Assembly: GCA_965655095.1 (NCBI GenBank) | Contig: OZ296653.1 | Coordinates: forward strand, 5,704,001-5,768,000 | Direction of reading: 5' to 3' | Source of the DNA: Haplodiscus bocki | Lineage: Eukaryota | Length of the DNA stretch: 64,000 nucleotides | In this document: positions 1 through 24,409 of the stretch, piece after piece | How the letters are laid out: each line of letters begins with the position of its first letter | How positions within the stretch are numbered: the first letter of the stretch is position 1 | The notes under the pieces: model-generated | Seen by the model: the letters and a program-made list of their open reading frames with translations, nothing else | Databases searched by the model: none | Told to the model about the DNA's origin: nothing | Made by a program: the position numbers and the translations under genes

Positions 1-232
1 TAAATTTATAGTTGCGCTCTGACTGTCTCAAAACGCATGTTTCCATCACTCATCTTGGAACCACCAATTCTATAGAGAGCGCTTGATGACCTAAATTGTA
101 ATGAGGTAGTAGTTGTGATTTTTCATTCATTTTCAGTCATTGTTTTCTGAAACTGAATCATTTCATCAGGCTTTCATCATTTTAAACAAAAAACTCGCGC
201 AATCGACTCGAAGTAAACTCGTTTTCGTAAAA

Positions 233-1523
233 ATGGCCGCCGCTCACGCACAGTCAACAGTTTCTCTTCCAAAATACGGAAGAAGTTGAACGGACAACTG
301 GACCGACTTTGAGTCCTTGTTTAGGAGCATAGTTGATGTCACAGGAATCCATGCAATTCAGAGAGTAGGATTTTTGAAACTTAACTTGAAAGATTCAGCA
401 TTACAGTTTTTTCACACTCTAGATGAAAACACTAGAGCAAACTTAGAGCTGACAATCACAGCTTTGAAGAACCTTTTTTGCAACCCGAATTTGAGGGAAA
501 TTCATCATATCAACTTAGAAAAAATGAATTTTAATCAGAAAATAGAGTCTCCGGAAGAATTTTTGGTAAAACTTCAAAATCTAGCGTTGAAAGCTTACCC
601 AACACGACTAGATCAGCCAGTAGCACCAGCACCATTTGATGATGTACTTGGTGACCAAGACCGATTTCATCGGGAAACCAGAGAAAATGAAAATAGGAGA
701 AATTTCGCTCAAATGGAACGCGAGAGACACATACTCAGATTATTCAAAAAAGCATTGCCGACTTTTATAAGACCTAAACTTTTAGAAGATCCTGAAACTG
801 CCACAATCCAAGAATTGTGCAGAAAAGCCAGGGAAAAACTATTTTTGAGAGAGTTATGTCCAGTAGATGACCGATCTAGAGACGGATTTAATGAAATGAG
901 TACAGACAACTCAGAAGAATTCTTGACTGTCCTAACCAAAATTACAGAAACTCAAAATTCTCTTGATAATAGAATTAACGCCCCGACTGAAAAAATTAGT
1001 CTGCCGCAACAAGGCATATCGGGTCAAAACACAAGCCAACGTTTTAACAACCAACAAAAATGGGGAGGAAATTCAAGAGGACGCTTTAACCAAAATCGTG
1101 GAAACCGAGGATATAATAATAATCAAGGATCAAATAAATTCCAGAATCAAAATCAAGGACGATATGGAAACAGTTTTAGATGAAAAAGGCAGAGGAAGAA
1201 ACAATTATACAAGGAACAATCGAGGCAATTACTCTAACAATGACAACAGAAATAATAACTTTCAACAACATGATAATCAAAATGTGGAAGTGACATTAAA
1301 CACAGGAAATGCTGAAGGACACATTGAGACAACAGCATTTTCAAAAAAAGTTTGCTACTCATGTGGTTATCCTAATCACACAGGGAAGAATTGTGAAATG
1401 AGAGAAAGAAGCAGTCATGAGGTGGACAGATTCCGTTCAACTCGCAGCCAAAAAACTAGTAACGCCACACACGTCCGACAGTCCACAAATTTTAAACCTT
1501 TTAAATTCAATGCACTACACTGA
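233..1523 (+). pseudogene. gag: gag (capsid + N/R/G-rich linker + CCHC zinc knuckle)
   Basis: ATG 233 is in frame with ORF 317-1183 through one TGA (MAAAHAQSTVSLPKYGRS*TDNWTDFESLF). Capsid-like 'QKIESPEEFLVKLQNLALKAYP'. After a frameshift, CYSCGYPNHTGKNC = CX2CX4HX4C. Confidence 0.9.
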
Positions 1524-1699
1524 AAATCATAATCTAAATGTTTTATCACCAGAATTAAATTTAGTGAATCAAAATCAGTCTGAAGGAAACCTAAACAATG
1601 AAACCCCCCAAACTCTGCCTCCTACGTATTTCGAAATGAACGCAGTCATTCCACTTGAAGGAGAAACTTTGATGTATTTCCCAATTCCCATTAAAATTT

Positions 1700-2030
1700 G
1701 AGAATGACGTTAAAAGAAAAGCATTAATTAACACAGGAGCGTGTGCTAACGCCATGCCCTCGGATTATTACGAAAAACTAAGAGAAGCATTCCCAAACTC
1801 CCTCTCGGATTTGAAGCAAGCTTCCTTCTTGAATGTCAGTAGCATCAGGGCGCAATGTGAGAGTGCTAGGGCAAATTGACGTTCAATTCAGTATAAATGT
1901 GCATAAATTTGACACGTTCCTAATCCTCCCTTCAATGAACAGTGTTGTCTTAGGCAACCCATTTTTTCGCAAATACAGTATTGAAATTAGCCCAGGAGAC
2001 AACATACTTAAACTGCCAGAAATGACATAT
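1700..2030 (+). pseudogene. retropepsin-like aspartic protease (catalytic D mutated to N)
   Basis: 'KRKALINTGACANAMPS' near 1712-1762 (DTG changed to NTG), then 'VASGRNVRVLG' and 'SVVLGNPFF' (the ILGxDF-equivalent motif). Confidence 0.85.
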
Positions 2031-2489
2031 GAATTGAATGAAATAAAAACAGCTAGTGAAGGACGCAAAATGGTTCCTAATCGACGTTACCCAGTTGTGA
2101 TGAGCCAAAAAGTCATTATCAAACCTCAGCATCAAGAAGTTTTACAGACAAAAGTAGATTTTAGGAAAAATCTTGAAGGACATACTGGAATGATAATCCC
2201 AGATGAAGATCTCGATAATAGTACTGAATTGAGACTCTCATCGTATGTTGCCACAGTTGTAAAAGACAATATAGTTTCGATTTTAGTGATAAACTTGAAC
2301 GACCATGCTGTAACATTTACAAAAACCAAACAAGTAGCAGTTTTCCAATTTCTCTCTCCACAAGAAGAAGAGGATTTAATTGAAATCAGTCCAGACATTC
2401 TGGCAGTTGAGAAAATGAAACATGGAGAAATTTTCAGAGATTAATCAGCTTATGAGAGTGGCAAAAACAAGTTGAGGCCGACAACCGAA

Positions 2490-4150
2490 ACGCCCTCCTC
2501 CTGAATATGACAAAATTTGGTTTCCCACACCAGAAACATGTCGAAATCTTGACAACCGACATTCCTTACAGAGAAAAATGTTCGATAACATAGCTGACTT
2601 GCAAAAAAGTACTCTTTTAGGTCCGCAAAATAACGAACAGGACAAGAAAACATTTTTAGCACAATTTGATTGGTCATGTTCAGCCTTGAACCAAGATCAA
2701 ATTTCTGAAATACAGCAACTTTTAGTTATTACTATGATATTTTTGCCAAACATAGATTTGATGTTGGATATAATACGGAATTGAAAGTTAAGCTGACACC
2801 AGCGGATGATTTACCAGTTTACGTACAAAGTCCACCCTCCCCAATCCACTTGAGAGATGAAATCTTAGTTGAATTAGCCCTTATGCAATATTATGGCATT
2901 GTCACACTTTTATCAAATTCTAAATATAGCAGTCCAATATTTGCACAACGCAAGCCGTCAAGGAAACTGAGAATATTAATCGTTTTGAGGCGTGTTAATC
3001 ACCTGCTTCGAAGTGATTACAGCGATAACATTTTCCCGTTTTCCAATATGACAGATGCCGTTCATCATTTTGCAGCAAAGACCATGTTTACCAAGTTAGA
3101 TTGTTCACAAGCTTATCACTGTGTACAAATGGCTGACCCCTTATCAGTCCAACTCTTACCATTCAACTTTGCCTCAAGAACATACGCCTACACAAGATTA
3201 GTTCAAGGATTAAACAAATCAGTGACAGGATTTAGCTCATTTGTCAGATCTTATCTTGATTCTTGCCTCGCGGCTAACTTTTGTACACAATTCATGGATG
3301 ATATCGGATGTGGAGTGGAGACATTTGAACAAATGGTACCCACACTTAGACAAATATTTGATGGTTTGCGCAAATCAGGACTTAGATTGACACCTCATGA
3401 ATGTGAATTTGGCATGACCTCGATAAACTTTCTTGGCAACACGATCACTCCGAAAAGACTTAAACCGGAAACTGACGAAGAGAAATTTTTGAAAACAATG
3501 AAATTGCCTGCAACAGTTATTTAAGTGAAAAGATTAATCGGTTTTGTCTTGTTTTTTTTTCGCACATTTTCACCAAACTTAGCTCAAAAATTGATGCCTC
3601 GGTATAAATTACTTCGGAAAGATGCTGATTTTTCCCCGAGTCATGATCATTCAAAAAGTTTTGAAACAATCAAGAAAGATCTTTTACAAGCAACCACTCT
3701 TAGAGTAGCAAAGCCTGGACAACAATATGTAATCCTAAGTGATGCAAGTTTTTACAATAGTGGACTTGTTCTCATGATAGAGGACTACCTAGAACACAAA
3801 GACGGTACGAAAAAACACGCATATGCACCAGTGTCTTTTGGCTCTCAACTTTTCAATACGAGTCAATTGAAAATGTCCACGTACTGTAAAGAGTTTTAAG
3901 CTTTTTAGTTTGCCTTAGAATATTTTTCTCATTTCATCCGGGGTACAGGAAAACCTGTAAATATTTTGACGGATAACAAGAGTCTCACTAGTTTTTTGCA
4001 GTCAAAATCACTTCATCCATCGTTATGGAATTTCATGGTTAGAGTGATAGCTTACATTATCGTTTTAGCTCATATACCTGGCCGAGCGAATGCAGCGGCA
4101 GATTTTTTGTCGCGAATGCAAACTGATCCATGTCAAAGCTTAGAACCCTA
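2490..4150 (+). pseudogene. pol: reverse transcriptase and RNase H of pol
   Basis: RT motifs: SKYSSPIFAQRKP, KLRIL..LRRVN, FTKLDCSQAYH, RLVQGLNKS, QFMDD, INFLG. RNase H motifs: YVILSDAS, TDNKSL, HIPGRANAAADFLSR. Several stops and frameshifts. Confidence 0.95.
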
Positions 4151-4427
4151 GTTGCTAGACTCCATTCCAATGAAACAAATTGATATAGATATGAAAACCA
4201 AAAGACCGGATGCATCTATACTACCCCTAGAATCGAGTAGCATCTTAAATGAAACAAAACCGCCTATACCACCGGATTTAATGGCACAGTTGCAAGCAAA
4301 TGAAGTGTTACAGATTTGAATTCCTAACCTAAACGAAATTCTAGCGTCTGCTTCACACAGAGAAACGATTGAACTTTTTGCTCCAAAAAGAGCGCCCGAA
4401 ATTCATTCAATTCAAGCAATCGACCCG

Positions 4428-5776
4428 ATGAAAATTTTCGATTCGTCAAATGCGAACACGCAAGTGATAGACGTTCATACAGAGCAGAAAAAAGATCCAG
4501 TCTTGCGTGAAGTTGTGACTTGGATTCGAAAAGGATGCACAGATGATATTACTTATGCTTCACTTGTATTAAAAAAATATCATAAGCACCTTTCGCGTTT
4601 GCACTTACAAAAAGGCATCGTAACTCGTCAATGTTTTAATGATGTTGGAAAAATTTCGCATTATCAAGTGTGCATTCCAAAACATTTGCGACAAGAATTA
4701 ATCTATAGAATTCAAAACTCACCGACCGGTGGTCATATCGGAATCGTCAGAACTGCCCAAGAGTGCCGTAAAAGATTTCCCGGTATTCACTGAATTCCTC
4801 ACGGATTACATCAAAAATTGTCTCTCATGTTCGACACTGAAACGAGTTAACAAAAAGCAATTGAACCCTCCTTTGCAACCAATCTCATCGGAACAACTTT
4901 TCCGGCAGATATGATGCAAATTGACCTGGTTGGTCCTTTCAAATCACCCATTTACAAATTTTCTCTTTCTGGCATTGATGTATTTTCAAAATATCTCTTG
5001 GCAGTTCCGCTAACATCGGCACATGCTGGAATCGTAGCAAAAGCATTAGTTTCATTATTTTTTCAACATAGCTACATTCCTACAACAATTCTGTTTGACT
5101 TGGGAACAAGCTTCTTAGCAAAATTGCAACACGAACTCACTGATTGACTTGAAATTCAGTTACAACACGCTTTTTTGAAGCATCTACAAATTATTGCAGT
5201 AGTTGAACGATCACATTCGGCATTGAAACGCATTATTAAACTTAATACGGATCAAAGTTGGAACACATGGTATAGGTATGTTGACCTAGCCACATTCATC
5301 CATAGTTCTTCTTACCATTACTCAATCGGATGTACACGTAGCTCATTATTTCATGGCAGGGAGCCTATCAAACCAATAGACCTGAGATTTCGGAGCCATG
5401 TACTAGCGAAAAAACAGCTAGCATCAGATTACCTGGTGGACTTGCAAGATTAACTTCTGGAACAGTTTTCACACATGAAATCTAGATTATTGGATGCCTT
5501 TCACAAATACCGTACCTGATACGATAAAAAGCAGCAGCCAAACCGTTGGCAAACCAGTATTGCTTACTGTTGAACCTTTCTTTGCTCACGCAAAGTAACT
5601 TTGCTGCAAAATCCGCAACGATTTGGCTTTCACTGTACAAAGTTGAAAAAGTTCTGACAAAATCTAACTACCTGATACGGAAAGTCGGTACTCCCTATAC
5701 CCAATGTGTTCATCGCATTAGGCTGAGACCAATAAAACCTAATTATGACATTGATGACATTTCTCTCAACGGATGA
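4428..5776 (+). pseudogene. integrase (HHCC zinc finger, DDE core, C-terminal domain)
   Basis: (H>Q)NSPTGGHIG...YIKNCLSC; IDLVGP, GIDVFSKY, LFDLGTSF, VERSH; C-terminal 'YKVEKVLTKSNYLI...VHRIRLRP'. Confidence 0.93.
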
Positions 5777-6559
5777 TTTTCGACCCGATACCAGCTGAGG
5801 AAAACATCGTTCCGAACATGAAATTCCGCCCTAGAGCAATCTTTTGAGGATACTTCTTCTTATCAAATTCCTGCTACGTCGCAAAAAAATTGACGATGAA
5901 GTACAACACACAATACGAGGTGCGATAGCTGGAGCACCAGTGCACGCTGCTGCTCCACCGGTTATTCATGGGGCAGGCGATGCCCCCCAGTCCCACCACC
6001 ACCCGCACCTGAGCCGGACCTGGACAACCTAACCTATCCTCAACCTAACCTAGTCGTGGACCGGCCTCAGGTACACACCGACAGTCCCCAGTCAGGTGTG
6101 CTAGCTCACGAAACCGCAGACGGTTACCTCGACGAAAACGTTCCTACATCTTGGGTTCATTTTCAGAGGACAGGAACACGATCTAGGGTTCCTACAAAAA
6201 GTCCAGTGCCCAAACTGAATGCTGAATCGCAGCCCTCTCGTATTCGATTTGACAGTTATGATCATTTTAGACAGGTCCCTAACCGAAAACAGTTGACAGA
6301 CGGTGGTTATTATGCTTATTTAGCTCAGCATATGGAAACACCGCCTACAAGAAATGAAAAGCACGAACACTTAAAGTCGATCGCACCGTCGACTCGACAA
6401 CAATTAGCGCAATCCAAATTTCCAGTGCCACAAGGTGGCCGATCACCCGCAAAAGCGATTTTGAAGCACTGTTATCCCGACCGATCCAATCGAGGACAAC
6501 CTGCCCCTTCTAATGACATTTATTCAGCGCAATTTCGAATCAATATGTATGATAAACCT

Positions 6560-7020
6560 TTTACTGAAAACATTGAGTTGACGTCTAACATTACAATTTC
6601 TGAATGTGATATTTTTAGTGACACAAAAGCAATTTTCGCTCACTCCGTTTCATCTGACCTAGCAATGTCAGCCGGGATTGCGATGCAATTTCTTCGTATC
6701 TTCCCCGACTTATCCGAATTACGCAAAACTCACGCCAATTTACCTCCAGGTTCACTGATAGCACAATTTAATGAATCAGGTAATAACTGGATATACAACT
6801 CAATAACAAAACGACCTTTTTCAGACAAACCGACTTGTTCTGACTTACACAAATGCCTTTGTCGCATGAAAAGTCACATGTTACACAATAACATTAAGGA
6901 AGTTCGCTTACCTCAAATTGGATGTGGTATTGACAAATTGGAGTGAAAAATAGTTTTGATGAATTGGGTAACAATTTTTGAAAGCACAACTGTTCCTGTT
7001 GAAATTTTCTTACTGAGAGA
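6560..7020 (+). pseudogene. Poa1p/TARG1(OARD1)-like macrodomain at the pol C-terminus
   Basis: 'DIF...AHSVSSDLAMSAGIAMQF', 'IYNSITK', 'KPT', 'LPQIGCGIDKLE*KIV' (TGA 6944-6946 at the conserved W). These match the TARG1-type motifs GDLF/AHCISxDxxMGAGIA/LITK/PRIGCGLDxLxW. Confidence 0.9.
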
Positions 7021-7385
7021 TTCAAATTCCAATAGTTCGGAAAATATATTGATTGCAGAGGAATATTCCTCGGATGAGGAAACGCAACGACATGTTCGAG
7101 AAATGAGTAAATTTCGGAATTTAGCTCTGAAATGTATGCTTAAATGCCCTCCCACGAATGACCGCAACATCCGTGACACACCACACTGAGAACTGCCACA
7201 AACGATAACCTATTTGTCAATTAGTCTTATCAGAACTTTGGCGACGTTCAGCCTGACCGATCTGATTAGAGTGTTTACCTTAAGTTGAAGTCCCATGTGA
7301 TTTCTTATCAGTCAACACTTCAACATTGAACTTTCTACAATTTATACATCATTTGGAATCAAATAAAATACAAGCAACGACGAAA

Positions 7386-7691
7386 ATGAATAACCTCTTT
7401 TGGGGCTATCAGCACCGTACTTTAACGTGCGAGATATTCCAAAATATTACGATTAGAAGAATTGAACATCGCAGACTGACTCCACCATGTCTTCGACTTT
7501 TTACACAGCGTTGGCACCACCAAATGCTGGTGTTTGATGAATTTAATGTCTTACCGCATACATTTGAATGGAGTGCATTGATTGACTCCACCAGGCAATA
7601 TGCTGATACGGAACACCTGGAAGATTTTGCTGACTGGCTTATCACAGTCGAGCAGCCTCTAGGGCGCACATTATTCTTCATGGTCTTGTAA
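7386..7691 (+). CDS. accessory small protein A (unknown Trp-rich family, paralogue of B and C)
   Basis: Intact 101-codon ORF from ATG 7386. Shares the M-x2-L-x-W...C(D/E)...W...P...W-x2-L...W pattern with the ORFs at 7818 and 8523. Confidence 0.7.
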   Translation: MNNLFWGYQHRTLTCEIFQNITIRRIEHRRLTPPCLRLFTQRWHHQMLVFDEFNVLPHTFEWSALIDSTRQYADTEHLEDFADWLITVEQPLGRTLFFMVL

Positions 7692-7817
7692 CATGACACC
7701 TGATATCGCTTAATTATTTTGGATCAATCATCATTTATCTTATCAGCCTCTATAGAAACACAGAATTTCCACTTCTATCATGAGTCCTAAATCAGTATTT
7801 CAACGTTAGCTATCACC

Positions 7818-8096
7818 ATGAGTCGTTTATTTTGGAAAATTCCCATCACTGGATACATATGTGATATTCATGGCGTTCCTGTGGTCTGGAGAGTGACCCT
7901 TCATGCATCACCCCGAGTGGACTTCACAATCCGTTATTGGAATCAGGGAGCACTCATATACGAAGATTTTACAATCTTCCCGGAATCACCGGAATAGAGC
8001 ACGCTCATGAGTGCCGCTGATCCCCATGCTCATGACTTCAACTTGGCTGAAGATCTCATTCACTGGATGGCCAGACAATTTCGAAGCAATTTATGA
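7818..8096 (+). pseudogene. accessory small protein B (one in-frame TAG; absent from the ORF track)
   Basis: Manual translation: MSRLFWKIPITGYICDIHGVPVVWRVTLHASPRVDFTIRYWNQGALIYEDFTIFPESPE*STLMSAADPHAHDFNLAEDLIHWMARQFRSNL. The TAG at 7995-7997 aligns with a Trp in A and C. Confidence 0.7.
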
Positions 8097-8522
8097 ATTC
8101 AGATCATGACATCACTCAAGGTCATGACATCACAACTTCGATTACTCTTAGACAGAACTATCATTTCCTGAATATTTATTTTTTACTTATTTTTGTATTG
8201 GTACCTTGAACAGAAAAACAAAGAAAGGAAAAAAACAAAAACCAAAACACAAAATCGAAAGAAATAAAAAAAACAACAGCACTTATTTCATTGAATCACG
8301 GTTCACGGTATTTGAGTTTCCAAACTCCCAGTTAGGAATTGTATGTTGTTAATTCATTCGGACAAAAAAATTTTTCTTTGGCATCAGTTTTGCTTGATGA
8401 AAGACAAACAATATAATTTGCAGTTAGGCTTTCTTGAGCATATGAGAATGCTTGACAGGCCTCGTCATTGTTGCATTCTCCCGACTGTATACTAATGTGT
8501 TCCGGAAGTTTCAGTTTTGAAA

Positions 8523-8837
8523 ATGCACCATTTAAATTGGCTTCATTCTCACGAATACTACGTTTGTGATGTACTTGGAAGAGTTCAACTAGTCGGTATT
8601 GGCGGCGAATTTGGCTACCCCCCACTGATTTTGACATTCCGCCGATGGAATAATGGCCACTTGCTGTATTGGCACGACACTATATTCCCTAACACTCCAG
8701 CTTGGAATGAGTTGATCGCATGGGCAGCCCGTAATGCGGAAACAACCAGCCAGCACTCACTTATCGACTGGCTAATTCACCTTGACGTCTTTGCCATCCA
8801 ATCCATGGCTTGGTATAATCAGCGCGAGTTATTGTAA
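8523..8837 (+). CDS. accessory small protein C (paralogue of A and B)
   Basis: Intact 104-codon ORF MHHLNW...VCDV...RRWNNGHLLY..TIFPNTPAWNELI...LIDWL, alignable to A and B over ~90 aa. Confidence 0.72.
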   Translation: MHHLNWLHSHEYYVCDVLGRVQLVGIGGEFGYPPLILTFRRWNNGHLLYWHDTIFPNTPAWNELIAWAARNAETTSQHSLIDWLIHLDVFAIQSMAWYNQRELL

Positions 8838-10114
8838 TAAAACTTCACATCGTAACTCGACGTTCTAATTAATTCTACTAGTATGAATTTTCATTTCACA
8901 ATTTACCGAAATTGACCTTCATTTTTCTTGTTTCTCTTACATAGCACGAGACGCTCCAGTGAATTTAATTGAGTTTGCTTTTCGGTTGCAAAAAAAAGTC
9001 ACTAGAGCCTACAGCAGGTCCGTTGCTGCTTTTCATTTTCCCTTTTACTGATGTTAATTTCACTTACGATATTCCGAGAAAGCCCCACAGTTTCTACGCA
9101 GCAACTTGATGTCAGAAAAAAAAACAAATTTGACACTGATAGAATTGTCAGATGGTAACCACAACTCTCTGAATAATTGCAGACGGACGTTTTCAGCTCT
9201 TTGGCCTGGTATAGCCTGGACAAACTAGACCATCAAATTTGATGCTTTAATTCATTTTAATTTCAATGACCATATCTTTTTCTTTTTCTCAATATTGTGA
9301 TCGAAAATGCGAAATCCGCCAAGATACGATTCTTCACCCCACTGTTGGCCTTCTTTTGAAGCACCTTTTTTTGCCTAATATTCGTCATAAAAAACGGGGC
9401 CATTTTGTCCTCAGATAACTCAGCGCCGAATGGTCTTTTTTACCGTTTTTTTTTTGGAAAACACAACCATTTTATTTTTTTTTCAACTTTTTGGCAGAAA
9501 TTCCAAAATCCACCACCATTTTTAGTTGCAAGGTCTTATATGTCGAATAAGGTCTACGTATGGAAGCTGGAGGCCCTGTGCTGCAAGGGGCACCACTTAG
9601 CAGTTTGGTGCCGCAGTTTGCTCGGGACCTCCACATGTGTGGATGCATAGTTATTACTCACCTTGAGGCTCCCGCATCTCGAAAGATAGCGCATTCTGCA
9701 AACTGTTTTTGCGCTATCCCGCTTTTCGGTCATGTGTTTTTCCAATCAGTGCACATAGAAATGATTCCATGAATTGATAACAATCTAGTATCAATTACCA
9801 TGATGAGATGATTTTACCTTTATTTTTTCTCTTTCGATTTCACAGAAGACAACCAACGGCCTAATCGGTCTATAAAAACTTTACTGTATGCAAATGCCAA
9901 GTACCCTTCAATTTATGTCTGTTTAAAGAACAGTCTAACCTTCTTTTTCAACCCTTCTCCGCTCGACTCATTTGCAACAGCGCCCAATATTCAGCATTCG
10001 TCTTTTTTTTCTTTGATACTAAATAGTTTTTTTTTGTGGTGGCTCCTCCGGAAGGGGCTTTGAATCAAACTGTAAACATTCTAATTGCTCGAATAATGCT
10101 GTCTTCTTTATCTT

Positions 10115-10890
10115 TCACTCGTCCAACTTGCCTAGTACTGCCTGATCGGAAACCTTTTTCGACAAAACACTGCGTCTCTCCCGTTGTAGATCGGTCGCAT
10201 AATAATTTAAAACATGCGCTCTCCTTCGTACATCATGCTGCATATAGCCCTCAAAGCCCACCAGCGGAGCCGGTCCCTTTCCCACAGTCAGTACGGTGTG
10301 AGCGCACAGTGCTGGGTGTATCATCAAGGATCTGGGTTGTGTTATAAAAAAACTTGACACTATCCCTCCACTGTTTTGGCGTTGGCTTTGTTAAGAGATT
10401 CACAAGCGACTTCACAGAGGTTAGCAGTTCCTCCAGCCGCCTAGAGGGACTTCCACGTTTGGATATCAACATTATCTTTTTTCCCACGGGTACATAGGTG
10501 ATGCTATCCTCTCCGCCAGTTTCAACATGGCCTGAGGTAAACCACGGACCAAATGACATTATTCCGTCCATTTTTGTAATTGTGAGACTCCCAGGGCACT
10601 GCATATCCTTTAGATTGTCCAAGTTAAAAGAGACAGCAGTTGAGAACTTCGTAAATTCTTTGTCATAACTTTTTATAGGCCCCTAAATTTGCGTTTTAGG
10701 AATCAAGATTTCTTTCTTCATATGAAGTAGCCACACCAACCTTGTTTTAGGGGTTGTTAGCCTCTTTACAAAACTCGTGATTGATTTTAAATAAGGATTG
10801 GTTTGTGATCACCAACGGCTCCGTTGCCCACTCTCCAGAAGACACAGAAGCCAACCCACAGCGCTCCATTTGGATTCTACTTCTTTCCAT
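10115..10890 (-). pseudogene. JmjC-like Fe(II)/2-oxoglutarate oxygenase, antisense within the retroelement
   Basis: ORFs 10251-10622 and 10115-10360 join by removing one base from the A7 run at 10346-10352. This gives T-x2-H-V-E-T-G-G...G-K-K-I-M-L-I followed by ITQPRSLMIHPALCAHTVLT. A degenerate N-terminus runs to ATG 10890 ('EPLVITN'). Confidence 0.78.
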
Positions 10891-11448
10891 GTTTTAAAGT
10901 GGTCCCGTGAATCTCAGGTACGGGCCTCCACCCCAACTCCGTGAATTTTGTTCACTTAGCAATGCTTCAACTGATTTATGCCCAAATGGGTTTCACTACG
11001 CGTTTCCATTCCTATAACAAAACGCTCCAGGTAAATACTTACCTCATTAACTCCTCATCCTATTACAGCGTTTCTGATCACTTTTCAGTTTGCTCCTTTT
11101 TTTAGTTGTTTGCGTTCACGGGTTTTTCTCTTTAACACAGAAGTTCTTTAAACAATCAAATGACCGTCGTGCACTCACCAGGTTATTATTCGCGTCAGTA
11201 TCTTTCCCCCGTTGATTTCCTGACTCGTCAATTCACTCTGAAAATACTTGTTCGTTCTGCGTTTTTTTTTGGGCTCATGATCTTCCTTCACTTGTATGCC
11301 AACCACTTATTTACTCAAACACTAAATTACTCTAAACTACAGTACAAATAACTAGTTGACAAAAAAACAAAGTAACACTGCAAAGTTACCAGAACTATCA
11401 CTTTCATCTGCTAAATGGTCTGCGGTAATCAAAGCTGCCTATTCTGTT

Positions 11449-11733
11449 TTAAAATCGGCGAAGAAGCCACAAGAAGATAAAAAGAAATACAGGGATGCAG
11501 ATCATGACCCACGACTGGTCTCCCGGCTCTCCGTCTCCCACAGGCCCAGGATTTGTGCAGAAGTCCAACACCTCTTGCACGCAGTGATGTCCCACGCATG
11601 TCATCTTGTCACAACATGTTATGGTCATGCCGGAGACAATTTTTTTTAAAACACATGACTCTTTGAGCTCTGAAACGCTCGACATTTTTCTTACACACTC
11701 TTTTCTTTTCACAATAAAACAACAAAAATACAA
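11449..11733 (-). CDS. small Cys-rich protein with C-terminal transmembrane segment (antisense accessory ORF)
   Basis: 'CCDKMTCVGHHC...FC', a P/G linker, then the hydrophobic WVMICIPVFLFIFLWLL followed by RR. Confidence 0.45.
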   Translation of the reverse strand: MYFCCFIVKRKECVRKMSSVSELKESCVLKKIVSGMTITCCDKMTCVGHHCVQEVLDFCTNPGPVGDGEPGDQSWVMICIPVFLFIFLWLLRRF

Positions 11734-11865
11734 AATTCTGAACTAAGTCAAAACCGCCTTTCGCCTTTCACCCGAAGCAAAGAAAAGTTGTCCATAACTT
11801 TTCCTTCTGGTGTATTGTTTTTTTCTCCCCGACACCTTCCGTGAAACTATTCAACTTTTTTCACA

Positions 11866-14335
11866 CGCGACATTTTTATTTCAGTACTTCCGCTCCTATT
11901 GGGTGCAATAGCTGCTCCGGCTGAATGGAAATGCGATATTATTGCTGACCAAAACTCTGGCACAGTACTTGCAAAAGGCATCATTTTCAACCACGTTACC
12001 AAAATTCTATTAGCTGAAATATTTATGTTGATTTTCTGGTTCCCTTTCCAAAGTTCGACATGAACGTGAGTGCCGACTTAGGCGCCTACATGGAGAAATT
12101 GGGAAAGCTTTGGAGCCACCCAAGTTGGGAATGTCATTTGGATTACTCCTCTATTTTTCAAACCAATGACTCTACGTTTGATATCGATTGGCTTTTACAT
12201 CATGTTCAGAACGAAGTTCGCACTGAACACGAGCTTATCGCTCTACGCAACTACAGTTCATCCTTCTTGAACACGCCACAGGGTACCGCCTCCGGACACA
12301 ATCGACCGCCGAGGGCAGCGCCACTTGCAATGATGGCGCTTGCTTCAGTTGGATTGTTCGGATCAGGAATTGCCCTTGGAGCTGGCGACTGCGGACTTAG
12401 AGGAATTTTTGGATCATGTCAAGAACGCGCTAAACAAAACGCAGCGAAAATAGAACAAATAGCAAAATTTACTGAATCTGTAGCAGAAGATGTTTTCAAA
12501 TTAAGAAGCGACGTGAACGATAAATTTTTCAAGGTTACGACGGAGCTCGCTGCACTTAAATCCGTTCAAAAGGAAATGCTTGGAATCCAAAATCGTAACT
12601 GGAAAGTTATACGAGAACATTTTGAAACATTTGAGCACAACATTCACGTTCTAAGAGACTGTGACCAGCTCTTATTCTCTCGACAGCAAATAAATTTCAA
12701 TTATGATATTATTTCTTCATTGCTGGTAGTAACTTTCGCCAACGTTAAAAGCTATAGAAGTGCTCTGTATACTTATCGGATTAACATGATGAATTCAATA
12801 CGGCCAATGCTCAATCATTATCTTCCTATGTCGCTAGTTTCCAGACAATCGCTCTTGAAACTTTCAGACAATGTAGCATTGGAACAATGACGAGTATCAG
12901 ACAGACTTTCTTTAGCAATTCCTCTTGTTGAAATATTAGCCTACCACGAATCGAAACTATTACGTGATGTTATAGTCGTCGAACAAGGACTTATTATGCG
13001 AATAGCAATTCCACTAGCAATCAAGGAATCAGCGTTTACAGTCTTTCGGGCTATAGCAGTCCCTATGCCTCAACCGGAAAATGATATGGCAATTAAATGG
13101 AAATTAGAAGCACCTTACTTAGCAATTTCAGAAAATAACGACGACACACATTTCTTAAGTGTATATGATCTCTCACGATGTATTGGATCTACTCGTTATC
13201 AATTATGCCTAGATATGATTGCAACTGAAGCAGGGCACGAGTCCTTCCTAGCAACTCTCTACTTCAAAGAGAGCGTTGAAGCTCTACAAACTTGCGATAC
13301 TGCACAAATAATATCACCGTCGACAGAAAAAGCAGAAAATTTAGGCTATGGCGCTTGGCTTGTCCCTTCAGCTACAACAGCTTATACATTGTACGAATCG
13401 GATACTGAATCTACTACGTCTTCGGGAATTGTTAAGTATCCAGGATGCCGAATGTGTATAATTACATTGAAGTGCGGAAGGCAAATGTCTGGTCCTCACG
13501 TCAATATAAGATCTGACCTCAGTACTTGCGAAGAACTTCCAGCTATCAAAGTGAATGTGAAATTTCCCGATCCCTTGAAACAGTTATGGAGTGAATTACC
13601 AGCATTTGAGGACATGCCTCATTACGCTACGAAGACAGAGGCAGGAGTTGCTTTACTCAAAGAAGTCCGTGAACGCTTACTCGAAGGTCCTTACTTGCGC
13701 GACCCGAAAAAAACTTTTAGACATAGCGCGTCCTATTACTTCTAAAATGACACAGTTGCGACCTTCCCTTTCTAAAGAATTTGAATCACAACTTTCTATT
13801 GATCTTTCTCTGATCATGAGTCTGATTTCTTTTCTTGGTTCTATGCTACTTCATGTAATTGTTGTTTGGCTGTATCGTCGCTATAAACATCGCCACCCTA
13901 CTATTCCACTTTGGTGTGGCCTCTTTTGCCCTAGAACGCCTAAAGAAACGCGAACAATAGGCTGCTCTGAAGCAGCCCCTGCTTACAGTGCTGAATTAAA
14001 ACCAGTACACATACAGGCTACTTATTATTCGACAAAAGTTGGAACTCTTACTCCAGCTCAATCACAACAAAGAAACGCGAACAATAGGCTGCTCTGAAGC
14101 AGCCCCTGTGTACAGTGCTGAATTAAAACCAGTACACATACAGGCTCCTTATTATTTGACAAAAGTTGGCACTCTTACTCCAGCTCAATCACAACAAAGT
14201 CTGCGCGCGAAATCGAACATAAACCTAGCTTCCCATCAGGAAGTCCATTCGACTGCGCCGCCAGTTGAGGCTCTTCAAAACCCAGGAAATCTCTCGAGAA
14301 GTGCTTCATTGCACAATGTGCAGCAAGCCCCTTGA
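11866..14335 (+). pseudogene. env: env-like class I fusion glycoprotein
   Basis: Signal-like 'IFISVLPLLLGAIAAP'; RPPR followed by hydrophobic AAPLAMMALASVGLFGSGIALGAG; long heptad/coiled-coil region; Cys-rich region; TM 'LIMSLISFLGSMLLHVIVVWLY' then RRYKHRH. Broken by frameshifts near 12030 and 13710 and by TGA at 12888. Confidence 0.85.
13942..14195 (+). repeat. 127-bp tandem duplication in the env cytoplasmic tail
   Basis: 13942-14068 is nearly identical to 14069-14195. AAAG occurs at the start of each copy and again immediately after the second. Confidence 0.95.
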
Positions 14336-14774
14336 CCGACATACAGAAAAAAAACGGTTATACTGACCGTTCGGGTCCTTTTTCGAACCGTTGGAAAAGG
14401 AACCAGAACATTTTTTTTGCAAGCTGATTGAAGTGATCATTGTCTTTTCGAACTTTTATTCACTCGAATCATTTTCACTTTCATCACTGTAGTGCAGTGA
14501 AATTTTCAAAATATAAAAGCATCCTGGGACTGGACGACAGTGTGTTGGCAACACAACGACAACTATTCTCGGTTCTGCATATTCATTTTGGATTTTGATT
14601 TTCATATTGGAATTATTCTCAACTCTTCAATGATATTTTGGATCGATTTGTACCTTTTGGTTTTGGAATTTTAATTTATACTATGCCATTCTGGAGATGC
14701 CTGTACTGCATTTGGGACCCTGGTTTTCCTTCGCCGTCTTCCTCTTGATGATGAACCAGCGGCGAAGTGACAGC

Positions 14775-14791
14775 AAGGAGGGTTGTGTAAC
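14775..14791 (+). other. probable polypurine tract and start of the 3' LTR (TGTAAC at 14786)
   Basis: AAGGAGGG-TTG-TGTAAC downstream of env. The LTR end cannot be fixed because the partner LTR is not in the window. Confidence 0.55.
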
Positions 14792-16732
14792 ATTGCATGT
14801 TATGCTTGACCTACAACAGAAGAGACTTATCTAAGGAATGTGCCCATCAAACTTTATCTTTACAGGAAATGTGAACAAAACTTAAACTTTGCACTTCCAG
14901 GAGCCTAAACGGCGCTATGTTCATGATAAACCTCTGCCGCTTATCATTTGTTTAAACATTACCTAATTAAATAATCTATACTCTCTAAAATTGTCTAAGT
15001 GTAATATACGTCTTCGATCATATTTTCAAATGTCTCTCCAGACTTTTGATGTGCGCTTATTTATGATCTCTACTGACAAGTAATAAGTTTATGCGAGGTT
15101 CTGTTGAGTTTAACTATCGGTCAATTTTCTTTCATATTCCCTAGAAGTTTTGTTCAAAACTGCCCCAACTTTGAAATGCCATCACAATCTGACTGCAGTC
15201 CTTCACTTACTAACTTTTGATTGAGGTAACAGAATAGCTTTTCCAAATGAACTTGAAAGTGGAGCAGTTTTTGGCTATTTTGCATCCTTTTGCCAGATTT
15301 CAGCCTTATATCCTACAAAGTTGGTCTCAAAACGTCGCATGATCACCAGAGGATTGTGAGAGAGACTCCAGTGTATTACCAAGTGCAGTTTGGTTGTTGT
15401 CAGAGAATGTTTCGGTAAATTTTTCCGAAAGGAATTCTACAGTTGAGCAGTTGTTGCCTGCTTCGAAATTTTTGTCAAAGTTTAGTCCTATATCGTCGGT
15501 GCTGCGCCCATAAAATACCCATTTCAAGCAAATGAATAACACACAAACTTTTGTGGTACATACCAAATTTTGGTTGTGTTCAGAAAATTTTTGCGAAAAC
15601 TTCCAATTCTAAATCATTGGCCTTACAAATCCGTGAGTAACCGTGGATTCAATTCGAAGGTTATTCTACGTTTTGCTTGCTTCTTCTAGAAGATAGTCCT
15701 TAGTGCCTATGTTTTGATGAAACCTACTGAAAATTTTTTTCACTAAGAAGCCATCCAAGGTGTTTTTTGAGCTTCGAGTAAAACGAAAAAGTTTTGTTTC
15801 TTGTTTTTGCTTGTTTGAGCAGATATCCGGTGTACATTTTTTCGTCAAAAAACACAGTAATGTGTCAGGGCGTGTGAGACCTAAGGAAGTAATTGCGTCT
15901 GATTCATTACCGGAGTTTTTTGTGCGAATTTCTCGCCAAAGTTAATCGGGGAATTTTGCGCCTTCATTGGTTCTTCAGCCGAAAACTTGTGAATACAATT
16001 CGTTTTACCTAGCTTTGAAGCATGCTAGTCTTAGAACTTCGTACATCTTGACTCTCAGGCTCGGCTCGTAGCTGCGGTACGTACGCTAGTGAAATTGTCC
16101 ATTAACCAATATTTTTTGGAACTTTTTCAAAACTGAAACTGCTTGTTTTGTCTGAAAATGTTTGTCGCCTTTACTTTTTGGGCTTTTTGTTTCCTTCACC
16201 TTAGAATTGACTCACATTAATCCTAGGCGCTAAGAAGCTCAATCAGGGATCTTTTGATGAGTTACTTCAGTTTTTACCCTGCGCAAAAATTAGTTTTTGT
16301 TACCGATTTTTATCGGTTTTTGACTGCAGCAGAAAAGAGGCTTTTTAGTGCTTTTCAATGGGCCAAAGGTGCTAATTTTGACTTTTTAAAAATAAAATGT
16401 TAGCACTTTGTTTCGATTGAAACTTTCTAGGTACTGGTCCAAACTAATGCGAAGTAAGCACCATTCTAGCGAAATACGTTAGAATTGTCAAGCATAGCAA
16501 CTTCCCTGATTGTTCCGAACTTTTTCTTTCAGTATCAACGTTCTACTAATATATAATACGGTTGACAAACGAAAGTTAGCCGAATACAGATTATTATAGT
16601 CTGTTCATTTTTGAGGTTTTTAGCGATGACTTATGGTAATCGAGAAATAGCTAATTTTGTGGAATTCTCCCTTCTCTTGGATTCTAAATCTGCTTGACTG
16701 CAATTGTAACGAGACGGCCGACTACCATCAGC

Positions 16733-18272: not shown

Positions 18273-18725
18273 AACATGGAAACTCCAATATATGTAAGAT
18301 TGGGGGTATCACGAACATTTTAAATTTTTGCGCAGTTTAGAAGCAATGAAGACCGTCGTCTATTTGACCAACTCTTAAACATGGATCAGTTCGTTGTGAG
18401 TTCTGTCATCTAACGAAAAAATCACTACAATAGTCGGCCTCTTTACTAAAACTAAAGCACCGAGTAAAAGCACTACTGATATGCTCTGGTGTTTCTGGGG
18501 CCTGAACTGGGTCAAGTTGCTGACAATAATTGTTGATTGAAAGTTTATTTATTCGACAGTTGTATTTGTAAAAGCTAAATATTTGGTACGAATGTATTGC
18601 AACTAGTTTAACACGGAGCTATGAAGTTACTTGTTACCCAACTCCGGACATAACCATGACTTTATAAATCCATCTTCGCTTGTGTTTTCAATTTTCGGTT
18701 GACTTTGTTGAAGTGACGTTTCCAG

Positions 18726-18941
18726 GCAATTTTAGATCGACTCTTCTGGGCAGCTTCCTTGCCAGACTTTTGGCCCATCAGAGGCAGAGTAGACGAACTG
18801 AAGACGACAGTGTTGTGAATGATGTCATCAGATTGAACTATTACGGAGACTGGGGTCAGCAGTTCAATCTACTGCTCACTTACTGCAAACAACTAAACGA
18901 AAAATTTGAGCCTGAAATTGAGAACAGACACGACAAAGGAG
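18726..18941 (+). CDS. RARS2: arginyl-tRNA synthetase (mitochondrial-type) exon, first visible
   Basis: Acceptor tttccag at 18725; (G)NFRSTLLGSFLARLL...VIRLNYYGDWGQQF is the second half of the HIGH region plus the ArgRS NY.GDWG.QF motif. Probable GC donor AG|GCAAG. Confidence 0.88.
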
Positions 18942-19493
18942 GCAAGAATTGCAAATATATTTATAAGAATACAAAGAAGAACCCGGCAAACTCCGGAATA
19001 TTTTCTGCTGTCCAACTTAGGAAAAAAGCGTTAAAAAAAGTAATTCGAACAAAATATCAGAGAATTCTTCTAAATTTGGCTTAAAATTCTTAAATTAATT
19101 CATGATTTTTTCGGATTTTTGATCAATGCTACTATATTAGACGGATTCTATGACAAATTTGGCGAAATACAAAAGTTCGATTGTGCAGTTTTGCATATCG
19201 TGCAGTTTTAATATAAAAAATCTTAATGTTGAATGAATGATTTTCCTTCCAAATGAAAATAGCAAGCCGTGCATGCTGAAGTCGGCGCCTCCGTCGACTA
19301 TCGGATTCGTGGGAAATCGTCGATTTCAGCGGTGTTAGAAAAGCAAAAGCTACTGGTACAGATTGGCCATTTTTTTGATATCGAAGCCATGTTACTCGGT
19401 TTTTGTTTTATTTTTTTCTGAAGCTTTTTCATTCATGCGACGTAATCCAAAATAAATTTTATGCGACATTTGATTTTTTCATGCAAACGGAGC

Positions 19494-19722
19494 AAATCTG
19501 CGTGGCAGTACAGGAGAGACCATACGGACCATCATAGTAGCAATGAGAATGCGCCAATCAAAAAGTTTCGGATTTTTTTTCGTGTTCCGCAGTCAATGTG
19601 CTTGGATTTTCGTGCGAATTTTTGAAAGAAGTTCATTTTTTTCCAAAAACGCAACAAATCTGCGTGGGAGTATAGTTTTGACCATACCCATCATATTGGA
19701 GGTAAAAGAGCGCAGATTAAAG
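19494..19722 (+). repeat. two degenerate ~70-bp direct repeats about 160 bp apart
   Basis: CAAATCTGCGTGG.AGTA.AG....GACCATAC...CCATCATA at ~19494 and ~19655. Confidence 0.6.
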
Positions 19723-22700: not shown

Positions 22701-22885
22701 TCTTAGAATGCTAAGGGTAGTTATTTTTCAGTTTCTGTTGTCTGGAAAATGAGGATAAATAGTTTCTGTTTAAGCGAGTTTATTGGAGAACAACTTTCAT
22801 ATTTCTGTGCAACCAAAAACAATCAAAATTGTATGAGATGACTTGCCTGTTTTTTATGTGTTCATACTTGGCTCTTTTTGCTCAG

Positions 22886-23180
22886 GAAGCGACCCTTATC
22901 TTCGTGGTCAGGACGATCTAGAGCTTGAAATAGAATCACTGAACATCGAAGATCTTTTGCAGTTATATTCGAAGGCTTTCCATTTAAGTCAAACTGACGA
23001 ACGTTTCAAACAGAAATGTGCTGAAACGCAAACTTTGATGGACGCTGGAGACGAAAGCTGTTTGCGGCTGTGGAAAATCATTCAGCGCAAATCTCTGCTC
23101 TATTTCAATTGCATCTTCACTATGTTCGGTATAGAATTTGATCAGCAAATTGGAGAGTCGCAGTACAAACACAAAACTAG
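22886..23180 (+). CDS. RARS2: RARS2-like exon
   Basis: tttttgctcag acceptor, AG|gtgac donor; 'GDESCLRLWKIIQRKS...FGIEFD...GESQY'. Phases 1 and 2 match the neighbouring exons. Confidence 0.92.
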
Positions 23181-24126
23181 GTGACCCACAAAAAAATGCT
23201 TAAAAAATTTGCAGGTCTCTTCACAATTTTACCAACCAATTTCTCATGAAACTTGAAACAAAAACACGTTTGTTAATAGATGCCAAATTGGTTCCACCGA
23301 CTAATCTCTTCTAGACTCGAAGACTATTCGTCCAAAATTGTGAAACAAAAACTAAAGGCTTGCTGAAAATCTTTGAGCAAACTCTACCCTGCTCATCATA
23401 GGTTTGGCGAAATTGGTTTTGAAAAAAAAATATCCATGTTTTCCAAAAAGTGCCCTTTCGTTTCGAATTTTTGAATGCACGGTATGACTTTTCAATCATG
23501 GAAAACTCACGCATGCTTAAAGCATCTCAGTAAAAATTGCATACTTTCCGTGATGATCCGTGACTAAGATGTGTAGATAATTTTAGTGAATTGAGCATGA
23601 AATTGTCACATTCACACTTGCCAAGAATTGGAGTTGTCAATTCTGACAATTGACGGGCGACACAGAATGACTGGAGGGGAATTCCGGCGTCTTCCTTACT
23701 AATTTGGAAGTAGAAATTGAAGATCTCTTTCTAATCCGATCGATAGTTAAATCTCGTCGGTCAAAATCTCCAAAAGTGCAAAAATAAGTGAAAACACCAA
23801 AATTGATTTTGCGTCCGATTTCGATACAAACAAGGACGTTGGTAGTCTTATCAAACTACAAAAAACATTTGGTGCCACCATTTTTGTGCCCATCCATTTA
23901 GATTTTGAGATTGATAGCCGCCACTGATTTTGCTATGGAGTTGTCCATTAGGTATAGTCACCACTGTGGTCTACACTTTGATGTTCGAATCGAAGTAAGT
24001 GTGAATTTAATTGGACGATTGAAACAAGAAGTGTGGAAACATTGTGAGAAGTTATCTTCTAGTATCAGCTTAGCTAATTTGGCAGATGCAATGTAAAAAC
24101 GAATGTTATGTTTCTGGGTCATCTAG

Positions 24127-24409
24127 TACGGAAGAAGTTGTTGAAGCGATGAAACAAAGTTTACAGTTTACTCAAGACTCCAACGGCAGCTTTTGTTTCA
24201 AATTACATAATGGAAAACCGCGCAAACTGTCCAAACGAGATCGAACTAGCTCCACATACCTTACAAGAGACGTCGCTGCCGCTTTAGACCGTATTAACAC
24301 CTTTCCTCGTCTCAACAAACTTTATTACGTAGTCGACAAATCCCAAAGCCAACATTTTGAGAACTTGTTTTTTGTGCTGCGCAACATTCTTCAGTGGAAG
24401 CAGAAACAG
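24127..24409 (+). CDS. RARS2: RARS2-like exon
   Basis: 'TYLTRDVAAALDR...LYYVVDKSQSQHFENLF'. Phase-2 start matches the previous exon. The 3' end is tentative (CAG|GCAGGG). Confidence 0.88.

What the first reader, a model, noticed from the sequence alone, without database searches (positions are those of the whole stretch)
7386..8837. Three tandem, highly diverged paralogues of an unknown ~100-aa Trp-rich protein
Seen: ORFs A (7386), B (7818, not in the ORF track) and C (8523) align from their start Met. The blocks are MNNLFW/MSRLFW/MHHLNW; TCEI/ICDI/VCDV; QRWHHQMLVF/RYWNQGALIY/RRWNNGHLLY; VLPHTFEWSALI/IFPESPE*STLM/IFPNTPAWNELI; FADWL/LIHWM/LIDWL. DNA similarity is not obvious by eye, yet the Trp/Cys/Pro skeleton is kept, and B's only stop sits on a conserved Trp codon. 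Inference: an old gene-family expansion under protein-level selection inside the element, as seen for viral antagonists of host defence. I do not recognise the domain.
Basis: partly seen in the sequence, partly recalled or inferred. Interest (0 to 1): 0.82.

Follow-up and report, generated by a model that had tools for sequence, protein, structure and literature searches.

The report
Tandem accessory genes of a retroelement
Three small, related genes that sit between pol and env of a decayed ~16-kb retrovirus-like element are real: they encode a previously undescribed, tryptophan-rich, almost lysine-free protein family that was kept by selection, varies from one to four copies per element, and has no recognisable relative by sequence or predicted fold.

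Summary
ORFs A (7386-7691), B (7818-8096, one in-frame stop) and C (8523-8837) are paralogues: local alignment scores lie 15 (A-C), 12 (C-B) and 6 (A-B) SD above shuffles. They lie between pol and env of an env-bearing Ty3/gypsy-like LTR element whose gag, pol, env and antisense gene are heavily broken. Sister copies in two other assemblies carry the same genes in the same place, in 1, 2, 3 or 4 tandem copies. Orthologues evolved under purifying selection (omega 0.04-0.4; p down to 1e-6), so these were working protein genes. The predicted fold is a four-stranded sheet plus two helices (pLDDT 82). Pfam, PDB sequences, PDB folds and viral folds gave no match, and 1.84 billion representative proteins held only unnamed copies from such elements. 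The proteins are soluble, near-neutral and strikingly poor in lysine (1.3% against 5-8% in gag/pol/env). In the window the A-B-C cassette is 88-93% identical to sister copies, the backbone only 74-75%, so the cassette arrived by recombination or gene conversion. The function is inferred only: host-protein-binding accessory factors, possibly linked to ubiquitin-dependent turnover.

The parts
1..15053 (+). LTR retroelement (Ty3/gypsy-like, env-bearing), cut at its 5' end by the window edge; the 5' LTR lies off-window
   Evidence: Pfam RT, dUTPase-like, zinc knuckle, Macro and weak Baculo_F hits. tblastn with intact gag/pol/antisense/env of sister copies. Window base 1 aligns 57 nt after the 5' LTR of L004. 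Sister copies have LTR pairs 15.3-15.6 kb apart.
233..1456 (+). gag, broken: 2 in-frame stops and 2 frame changes
   Evidence: tblastn with L007 and L008 gag, 64-68% identity.
1633..7207 (+). pol (protease, RT, RNase H, integrase, C-terminal macrodomain), broken: 24-31 in-frame stops, 2-5 frame changes, several indels of 5 aa or more
6581..6943 (+). OARD1/TARG1-type macrodomain at the C-terminal end of pol
   Evidence: Residues 176-296 of ORF 6056-6943 match PDB 4j5r (O-acetyl-ADP-ribose deacetylase 1) at E 1.5e-16. The same domain is in L008 pol at E 5e-8. Pfam Macro scores lie just under the cut-off.
7377..8997 (+). High-identity tract (the A-B-C cassette with its spacers) shared with sister copies
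   Evidence: blastn tract bounds. Identity to L006/L007 by region is 88-93%, against 74-75% for gag/pol/env. dS is 0.13-0.39 against 1.2-4.
7386..7691 (+). Gene A, 101 aa, intact; no lysine
7818..8096 (+). Gene B, 92 codons, broken by one in-frame stop; intact 93-aa orthologues exist elsewhere (e.g. P0027, a cluster of 39 members)
8490..8514 (+). Conserved TACTAA(T/C), then a pyrimidine-rich stretch ending in CAG, 9 nt before the ATG of C. It looks like a branch point plus 3' splice site (inferred only).
   Evidence: Alignment of five copies. One copy has lost the AG.
8523..8837 (+). Gene C, 104 aa, intact; no lysine
9938..10974 (-). Remnant of the element's antisense gene (356-362 aa when intact), broken: 6 in-frame stops and 2 frame changes
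   Evidence: tblastn with the L007 and L008 antisense ORFs, E 1.6e-52. No Pfam or PDB match.
11911..13995 (+). env-like gene (786 aa when intact), broken: 1 in-frame stop and 2 frame changes
   Evidence: 71% identity to L008 env. Weak Baculo_F hit, E 0.006.
14776..15053 (+). 3' LTR, bounds approximate (inferred)
   Evidence: Projected from the 278-nt LTR pair of L004 through the 68%-identical alignment 14384-14945.

Best explanation
A, B and C are three diverged tandem paralogues of an accessory protein gene. The gene belongs to a group of ~16-kb, env-bearing, Ty3/gypsy-like endogenous retrovirus-like elements with the layout gag - pol (PR-RT-RH-IN-macrodomain) - 1 to 4 small genes - antisense gene - env. 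SHOWN: Each gene is a separate ORF that starts at a conserved Met. Each encodes a soluble, near-neutral protein of about 93-104 aa, with four fixed Trp and almost no Lys. The predicted fold is a four-stranded antiparallel sheet backed by two helices. The genes were under purifying selection while the element lineages diverged. The array grew and shrank by tandem duplication and loss. The copy in this window is a dead element: A and C are still intact and B carries one stop. Its cassette is much younger than its backbone, so it came in by recombination between element lineages or by gene conversion from a younger copy. INFERRED: The genes are expressed from spliced subgenomic RNAs; a branch-point and acceptor look-alike sits just before C. 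The proteins act as small protein-binding adaptors on host factors. Their lysine depletion would protect them from ubiquitin-dependent turnover, either while they work with the host ubiquitin system or while they escape it. That is the same logic as the accessory proteins of complex retroviruses, though not the same fold. I put about 0.9 on 'a genuine element-encoded accessory protein family' and about 0.3 on the host-factor/ubiquitin-linked mechanism.
For: Paralogy: z = 15, 12 and 6 against shuffles. Context: Pfam and tblastn map gag, pol, antisense and env around the genes. Every family member whose contig I fetched (loci L001-L014) lies between pol and the antisense gene of the same element type. 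Selection (NG86 omega): C W-L006 0.15 (p 1.4e-5); C L006-L007 0.04 (p 1.4e-6); A W-L001 0.24 (p 1e-5); A W-L011 dN 0.38 with dS saturated (p 6e-6); B L006-L007 0.37 (p 0.02). Copy number 1, 2, 3 or 4; NJ tree groups genes by type across lineages. Fold: pLDDT 82, pTM 0.72, with the same sheet-then-helices core in the independent model of C. No transmembrane stretch; pI mostly 4-7. Lysine: 1.3% pooled against 5-8% in gag/pol/env, and none in the A and C types. There are 7 Lys codons against 27.8 expected from the genes' own base composition, Poisson P 3e-6. Lysine deserts are enriched in ubiquitin-proteasome components and substrate receptors (PMC10169902, PMC10665810). Mosaic: cassette 88-93% against backbone 74-75% DNA identity; dS 0.13-0.39 against 1.2-4. 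Splice-site look.
Against: There is no expression data of any kind, and no binding partner is known. Omega values are low, not raised, so nothing points to an arms race. The sequence comparisons use a handful of related copies that share branches, so the p-values are not independent. Lysine depletion has other possible causes, such as structural composition or avoidance of A-rich signals in a region that must be spliced or read through. The four Trp sit inside predicted strands and helices and may only build the core. The AlphaFold DB was not available, so a cellular fold relative cannot be excluded. The host organism is not identified.
Confidence: 0.45

Rival explanations
1. The proteins serve the element's own replication rather than acting on host defence. 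They could be regulators of its expression or RNA handling, or small virion or assembly components. The paralogues would then have divided such tasks between them.
For: Strong purifying selection with no sign of diversifying change. Fixed position next to the other element genes in every lineage. One copy is enough in the intact-looking L008-L010 elements.
Against: The proteins are near-neutral to acidic with no basic patch, which argues against RNA or DNA binding. Copy number changing from 1 to 4, and cassette exchange between lineages, are unusual for core replication functions. There is no similarity to gag, pol or env parts.
Confidence: 0.3
2. In this window, A and C are intact because the host has taken them over (domestication) and keeps them under selection. 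Decay simply missing them would not be the reason.
For: The copy's pol carries 24-31 stops, which implies about 8-11% neutral decay. The cassette has 1 break where 4-5 are expected (P about 0.055). C shows omega 0.15 against L006.
Against: The non-coding A-B spacer is as conserved as the genes (89%), and B is broken. Many other copies carry the same intact genes. A transfer of the whole 1.6-kb tract from a younger copy explains all of this without host selection. The deficit of breaks is not significant.
Confidence: 0.05
3. The ORFs are not genes: the similarity is a decayed DNA triplication, and the open frames are chance.
For: The three units are tandem, one is broken, and several sister copies are broken.
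Against: Non-synonymous change is strongly deficient in the proposed frame in all three genes. The Met, the four Trp, the Cys and the Pro are conserved at 20-28% identity. Intact copies are numerous, for example a 39-member cluster for B. A confident fold is predicted from the family alignment.
Confidence: 0.02

Closest known systems
Accessory genes of complex retroviruses, in particular the lentiviral Vpr/Vpx paralogue pair
   Same: Small (about 100 aa), Trp-containing, non-enzymatic proteins. They are encoded by separate ORFs outside gag-pol-env, multiplied by duplication within the element, and kept by selection. They appear to act as adaptors rather than enzymes (the last point is inferred here).
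   Different: No sequence or fold relation was found: no Pfam, PDB-sequence, PDB-fold or viral-fold match. From general knowledge Vpr/Vpx are helical bundles, whereas this family is predicted as a four-stranded sheet plus two helices. The carrier is a Ty3/gypsy-like element, not a member of Retroviridae. Binding to a ubiquitin ligase is not shown.
Errantiviruses and other env-bearing Ty3/gypsy (Metaviridae) elements
   Same: LTRs, gag, pol in the order PR-RT-RH-IN with Integrase_H2C2 and rve domains, and a third large ORF in the env position.
   Different: The elements are about 16 kb instead of about 7-8 kb. They carry extra genes: a macrodomain fused to pol, 1-4 small genes, and an antisense gene of about 360 aa. 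The env match to baculovirus F is weak and below threshold and absent for the intact L008 env. The host is unknown.
Lysine-desert proteins of the ubiquitin-proteasome system (PMC10169902, PMC10665810, review PMC13696103)
   Same: Lysine is absent or nearly absent over the whole protein, and this is conserved across orthologues and paralogues, while Arg and His are used freely.
   Different: The described deserts are mostly in disordered regions of cellular ligases and receptors; these are small folded proteins of a mobile element. No link to ubiquitin has been tested.
[quoted passage not shown] 2009, as cited in PMC4977317); retroviruses with an antisense gene (deltaretroviruses, from general knowledge)
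   Same: Retrovirus-like elements that captured a macrodomain and carry additional ORFs; one gene is read from the minus strand.
   Different: Here the macrodomain is fused to the end of pol in a Ty3/gypsy-like backbone. The antisense protein has no detectable relative.

Membership tests
Retroelement accessory gene (functional class) | Separate ORF inside an LTR retroelement, outside gag, pol and env | tested here: met
   The genes lie between pol (ends 7207) and the antisense/env genes. The position is the same in 13 related loci.
Retroelement accessory gene (functional class) | Maintained as a protein-coding gene by selection during the element's spread | tested here: met
   Omega 0.04-0.4, with p down to 1e-6, for A, B and C orthologues.
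Retroelement accessory gene (functional class) | Expressed from a spliced subgenomic RNA | not testable with these tools
   The only evidence is a conserved branch-point and acceptor look-alike before C. No transcript data were available.
Lentiviral Vpr/Vpx family | Sequence or fold homology to Vpr/Vpx | tested here: not met
   No such hit came back from Pfam, PDB sequences, PDB folds or viral folds. The predicted fold contains a four-stranded sheet.
Errantivirus / env-bearing Metaviridae | LTR element with pol order PR-RT-RH-IN and Ty3/gypsy-type RNase H and integrase domains | tested here: met
   RVT_1, RT_RNaseH, RT_RNaseH_2, Integrase_H2C2, rve and gag-asp_proteas in L008 pol. LTR pairs in sister copies.
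Errantivirus / env-bearing Metaviridae | env related to the baculovirus F protein | tested here: inconclusive
   Baculo_F at E 0.006, 15.6 bits against a cut-off of 24.1, on one window fragment. No family at E 0.01 or better for the intact 786-aa L008 env. No PDB sequence hit.
Lysine-desert proteins | Long, evolutionarily conserved stretch without lysine | tested here: met
   A and C types have 0 Lys over 101-104 aa in several diverged copies. The family pool is 1.3% Lys against 5-8% in gag/pol/env. 7 Lys codons against 27.8 expected.
Lysine-desert proteins | Function within or against the ubiquitin-proteasome system | not testable with these tools
   No data.
GW/WG 'Argonaute-hook' silencing suppressors (considered because of the Trp richness) | Repeated GW/WG motifs in flexible regions | tested here: not met
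   The Trp occupy four fixed columns inside predicted strands and helices. Only the A type has a single WG.

The most novel reading that the evidence does not exclude
These elements may be 'complex' retrovirus-like agents outside the Retroviridae that carry a full counter-defence kit. The kit would comprise an ADP-ribose-removing macrodomain on pol, an antisense gene, and an expandable, exchangeable cassette of lysine-free adaptor proteins with a new fold that redirect or evade the host ubiquitin system. Cassette swapping between element lineages that are saturated at synonymous sites would then be the mobile-element counterpart of accessory-gene exchange among lentiviruses.
Probability: 0.2. 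Interest if true: 0.8.

Novelty: new variant of a known kind. Interest (0 to 1): 0.58.

Why it matters
Accessory genes are what separate 'complex' retroviruses from simple ones, and nearly all that is known about them comes from vertebrate viruses. This work defines an undescribed accessory protein family in a Ty3/gypsy-like lineage. The family has measurable selection, copy number from one to four, and a confident predicted fold with no known relative. It also has a compositional signature, near absence of lysine, that points to a testable class of function. It travels as a cassette between diverged element lineages. Together with the pol-fused OARD1-type macrodomain and the antisense gene, it marks this element group as a promising place to study how retroelements outside vertebrates deal with host control. 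The family could also be added to domain databases to improve the annotation of such elements.

Tried and rejected
1. Known domain: Pfam on the three ORFs and on 28 family members gave nothing. PDB sequence searches with a single protein and with a profile gave nothing below E 0.35.

2. Fold relatives: Foldseek of two models against PDB and of the better model against BFVD gave best E 0.03-0.08 and TM at most 0.38. The lipocalin, coat-protein and gL hits are partial sheet matches, and I reject them.

3. Further copies in the window: none in any of the six frames.

4. Relatives in named sources: two word searches and the 1.84-billion-protein profile search returned only unnamed ENA proteins. 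The one outside hit, P0075, is a pentatricopeptide-like repeat protein and is spurious.

5. Host identity: searching the literature for the three ENA analysis accessions found nothing. Rfam and tRNA scans of the window were empty. The host stays unidentified beyond 'a eukaryote with introns'.

6. Membrane or secreted protein: rejected, with no hydrophobic stretch.

7. Nucleic-acid-binding regulator: disfavoured by pI 4-7.

8. Trp as Argonaute hooks: rejected.

9. The idea that A and C are significantly better preserved than the rest of the copy: only marginal (P about 0.055).

10. Literature on LTR elements with macrodomains: only an indirect mention for fish ERVs.

Full report
OBSERVATION. 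The window is eukaryotic DNA of about 40% G+C with no N. The three ORFs exist as described. A runs 7386-7691 (101 aa). B runs 7818-8096 (92 codons, one frame, exactly one in-frame stop). C runs 8523-8837 (104 aa). Local BLOSUM62 scores against 2000 shuffles give z = 15.4 for A-C, 12.3 for C against the first piece of B, and 6.2 for A against the first piece of B. The short second piece of B is not significant alone, but it matches the 18-member family profile. A profile of the three finds nothing else in the window.

WHAT SURROUNDS IT. Pfam finds a zinc knuckle, a dUTPase-like stretch, RT, a Macro domain and a weak Baculo_F match in the flanking ORFs. With intact proteins from sister copies, tblastn maps these genes:
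- gag at 233-1456
- pol at 1633-7207
- a minus-strand gene remnant at 9938-10974
- env at 11911-13995

The element is cut by the window's left edge, 57 nt after where a 5' LTR would end. It ends near 15053 with an inferred 3' LTR. It is a dead copy. Break counts are:
- gag: 2 stops and 2 frame changes
- pol: 24-31 stops, 2-5 frame changes and several larger indels
- env: 1 stop and 2 frame changes
- antisense gene: 6 stops and 2 frame changes
- B: 1 stop
- A and C: none

RELATIVES. A word search with C found five unnamed ENA proteins. A search with an alignment found 43. The profile search of 1.84 billion representatives found 31, one of them spurious. A third word search with the divergent members found 17. 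None carries a name or comes from a source other than ENA.

Every contig I fetched (L001-L014, from analyses ERZ26859043, ERZ27298220 and ERZ25074608) shows the same element type. The small genes always lie between pol and the antisense gene. LTR pairs lie 15.3-15.6 kb apart.

L008-L010 are three near-identical, intact-looking copies: gag 402 aa, pol 1907 aa, one small gene of 94 aa, an antisense ORF of 356 aa and env of 786 aa. Copy number per element varies:
- 1 in L008-L010
- 2 in L011 and L013
- 3 in the window, L001-L004, L006 and L007
- 4 in L012

A neighbour-joining tree groups genes by type, not by element. First-position genes are orthologous across the 2-, 3- and 4-copy lineages. The duplications are therefore old.

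- L006 and L007: all three intact
- L001: B broken
- L002: B truncated at its start
- L003 and L004: all three broken, and L004 has an extra partial first gene from an internal 1-kb duplication

SELECTION.
- C: W-L006 omega 0.15 (p 1.4e-5); W-L007 0.20; L006-L007 0.04 (p 1.4e-6).
- A: W-L001 0.24 (p 1e-5); L001-L006 0.18 (p 5e-7); W-L011 dN 0.38 with saturated dS (p 6e-6).
- B: L006-L007 0.37 (p 0.02); L007 against the first piece of the window's B, 0.26 (p 0.004).

Some close pairs are near 1 (A, L002-L006 0.99), as expected for decay after insertion. The pairs share branches, so these are not independent tests, but the signal is present in all three genes.

THE PROTEIN. With 28 diverse members, AlphaFold2 gives pLDDT 82 and pTM 0.72 for A. 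It predicts strands at 2-8, 21-29, 35-44 and 47-55, and helices at 60-71 and 76-89. An earlier model of C from 18 sequences shows the same sheet-then-two-helices core at pLDDT 70. This explains why conservation starts at the first residues.

Foldseek finds no relative in PDB or BFVD; best E is 0.03-0.08 and TM is at most 0.38. AlphaFold DB was not available. The proteins have no hydrophobic segment and pI mostly 4-7.

They are Trp-rich (4.6% against 0.4-1.1% in gag/pol/env) and lysine-poor (1.3% against 5-8%). The A and C types have no lysine at all. Lys codons number 7 against 27.8 expected from the genes' own base composition (P 3e-6). The paralogue types differ most in the second and third strands and in type-specific C-terminal tails.

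MOSAIC ORIGIN OF THE WINDOW'S CASSETTE. Against L006 and L007, DNA identity differs by region:
- gag, pol and env: 74-75%
- A: 93%
- A-B spacer: 89%
- B: 88-89%
- C: 91%

The high-identity tract runs from about 7377 to 8997, and the spacers outside it do not align. Synonymous divergence is 1.2-4 for gag and pol but 0.13 for A and 0.24 for C.

The pol stop count implies about 8-11% neutral decay of this copy. At that rate 4-5 breaks are expected in the cassette and one is seen (P about 0.055). C also shows too few non-synonymous differences for that much decay.

The simplest reading is that the cassette is younger than the backbone. It would have been brought in by recombination between element lineages, or by gene conversion from a younger copy after insertion. 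Host constraint on A and C is a weaker alternative.

EXPRESSION (INFERRED). Nine nt before the ATG of C lies a pyrimidine-rich stretch ending in CAG, preceded by TACTAA(T/C). This is conserved in five copies, one of which has lost the AG. The region before B is 92% conserved among four copies and also holds pyrimidine-AG sites. This resembles acceptor sites for subgenomic RNAs. No transcript data could be consulted.

MECHANISM. Shown: an element-borne, selected, soluble, folded, lysine-poor protein family in a variable tandem array. Inferred: the proteins are adaptors that bind host proteins, and lysine avoidance shields them from ubiquitin-dependent turnover. The lysine-desert literature links that trait to ubiquitin-system components and substrate receptors (PMC10169902, PMC10665810, PMC13696103). 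The neighbouring OARD1-type macrodomain shows that this element group does carry at least one captured host-type enzyme. In RNA viruses that class of enzyme is known, from general knowledge, to counter ADP-ribosylation-based defence. I put about 0.3 on the host-factor/ubiquitin-linked mechanism, about 0.3 on a role in the element's own replication, and the rest on 'other'.

COMPARISON. In logic the family resembles retroviral accessory genes such as the Vpr/Vpx pair. It fails the homology test for that family. The carrier passes the structural tests for an env-bearing Ty3/gypsy element, but the errantivirus-type env test is inconclusive. I rate the finding as a new variant of a known kind.

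One slip: the script printed stop-to-stop segment bounds for the window's B and for broken sister genes, which in effect brackets their breaks. I noticed this afterwards. Later scripts printed only counts and outer bounds.

Nothing in the window looked human.

Noticed in passing
window 6581-6943 (+); L008 about 9240-9620: The element's pol ends in an OARD1/TARG1 (C6orf130)-type macrodomain. It matches PDB 4j5r at E 1.5e-16 in the window and 5e-8 in the intact L008 pol. Pfam Macro scores lie just under the cut-off. A captured ADP-ribose-removing domain fused to a retroelement polymerase seems little described; the only literature trace found was macro-domain ORFs in fish epsilon-like ERVs (PMC4977317).
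   Followed up: partly
window 9938-10974 (-); L007 11077-12162 (-); L008 11144-12211 (-): A minus-strand gene of 356-362 aa lies between the small genes and env. It is intact in several copies and conserved at 30-49% identity across lineages. It is lysine-rich (8-11%) and has no Pfam or PDB sequence match. It looks like an antisense gene inside a retroelement.
   Followed up: partly
window 7377-8997 compared with the rest of 1-15053: The A-B-C cassette is 88-93% identical to L006/L007 while gag, pol and env are 74-75% identical. The flanking spacers do not align at all, so the exchange borders hug the cassette.
   Followed up: yes
window about 18680-32620 (+): Exons of a host arginyl-tRNA synthetase gene, separated by long introns. 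Three ORF fragments hit Pfam tRNA-synt_1d at E 1e-8 to 9e-6, and PDB 1bs2 matches at E 2e-4. This shows the window is from a eukaryotic chromosome.
   Followed up: partly
window about 34180-57000: Seven tandem copies of a 3.29-3.30-kb unit, 90-100% identical to each other, with marked negative AT skew. The two longest ORFs inside have no Pfam match. Its nature is unknown.
   Followed up: no
window 13942-14195: Two tandem copies of a 127-nt unit (96% identical), just after the env region of the element.
   Followed up: no
window 33241-33945 (-): A 234-aa ORF that by eye resembles the C-terminal part of a non-LTR retrotransposon protein. It has no Pfam hit at E 0.01.
   Followed up: no
L014 1-7300: A Polinton/Maverick-like stretch (weak Pox_A32 packaging ATPase hit plus an rve integrase) lies directly upstream of a 5'-truncated copy of the retroelement.
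   Followed up: no
L002 1-3495 and 16528-19963; L013 about 1037-3643: In L002 the direct repeat extends far beyond an LTR, to about 3.4 kb, which suggests two elements in tandem sharing an LTR. L013 has a run of four repeated 101-aa ORFs about 767 nt apart in its gag region.
   Followed up: no
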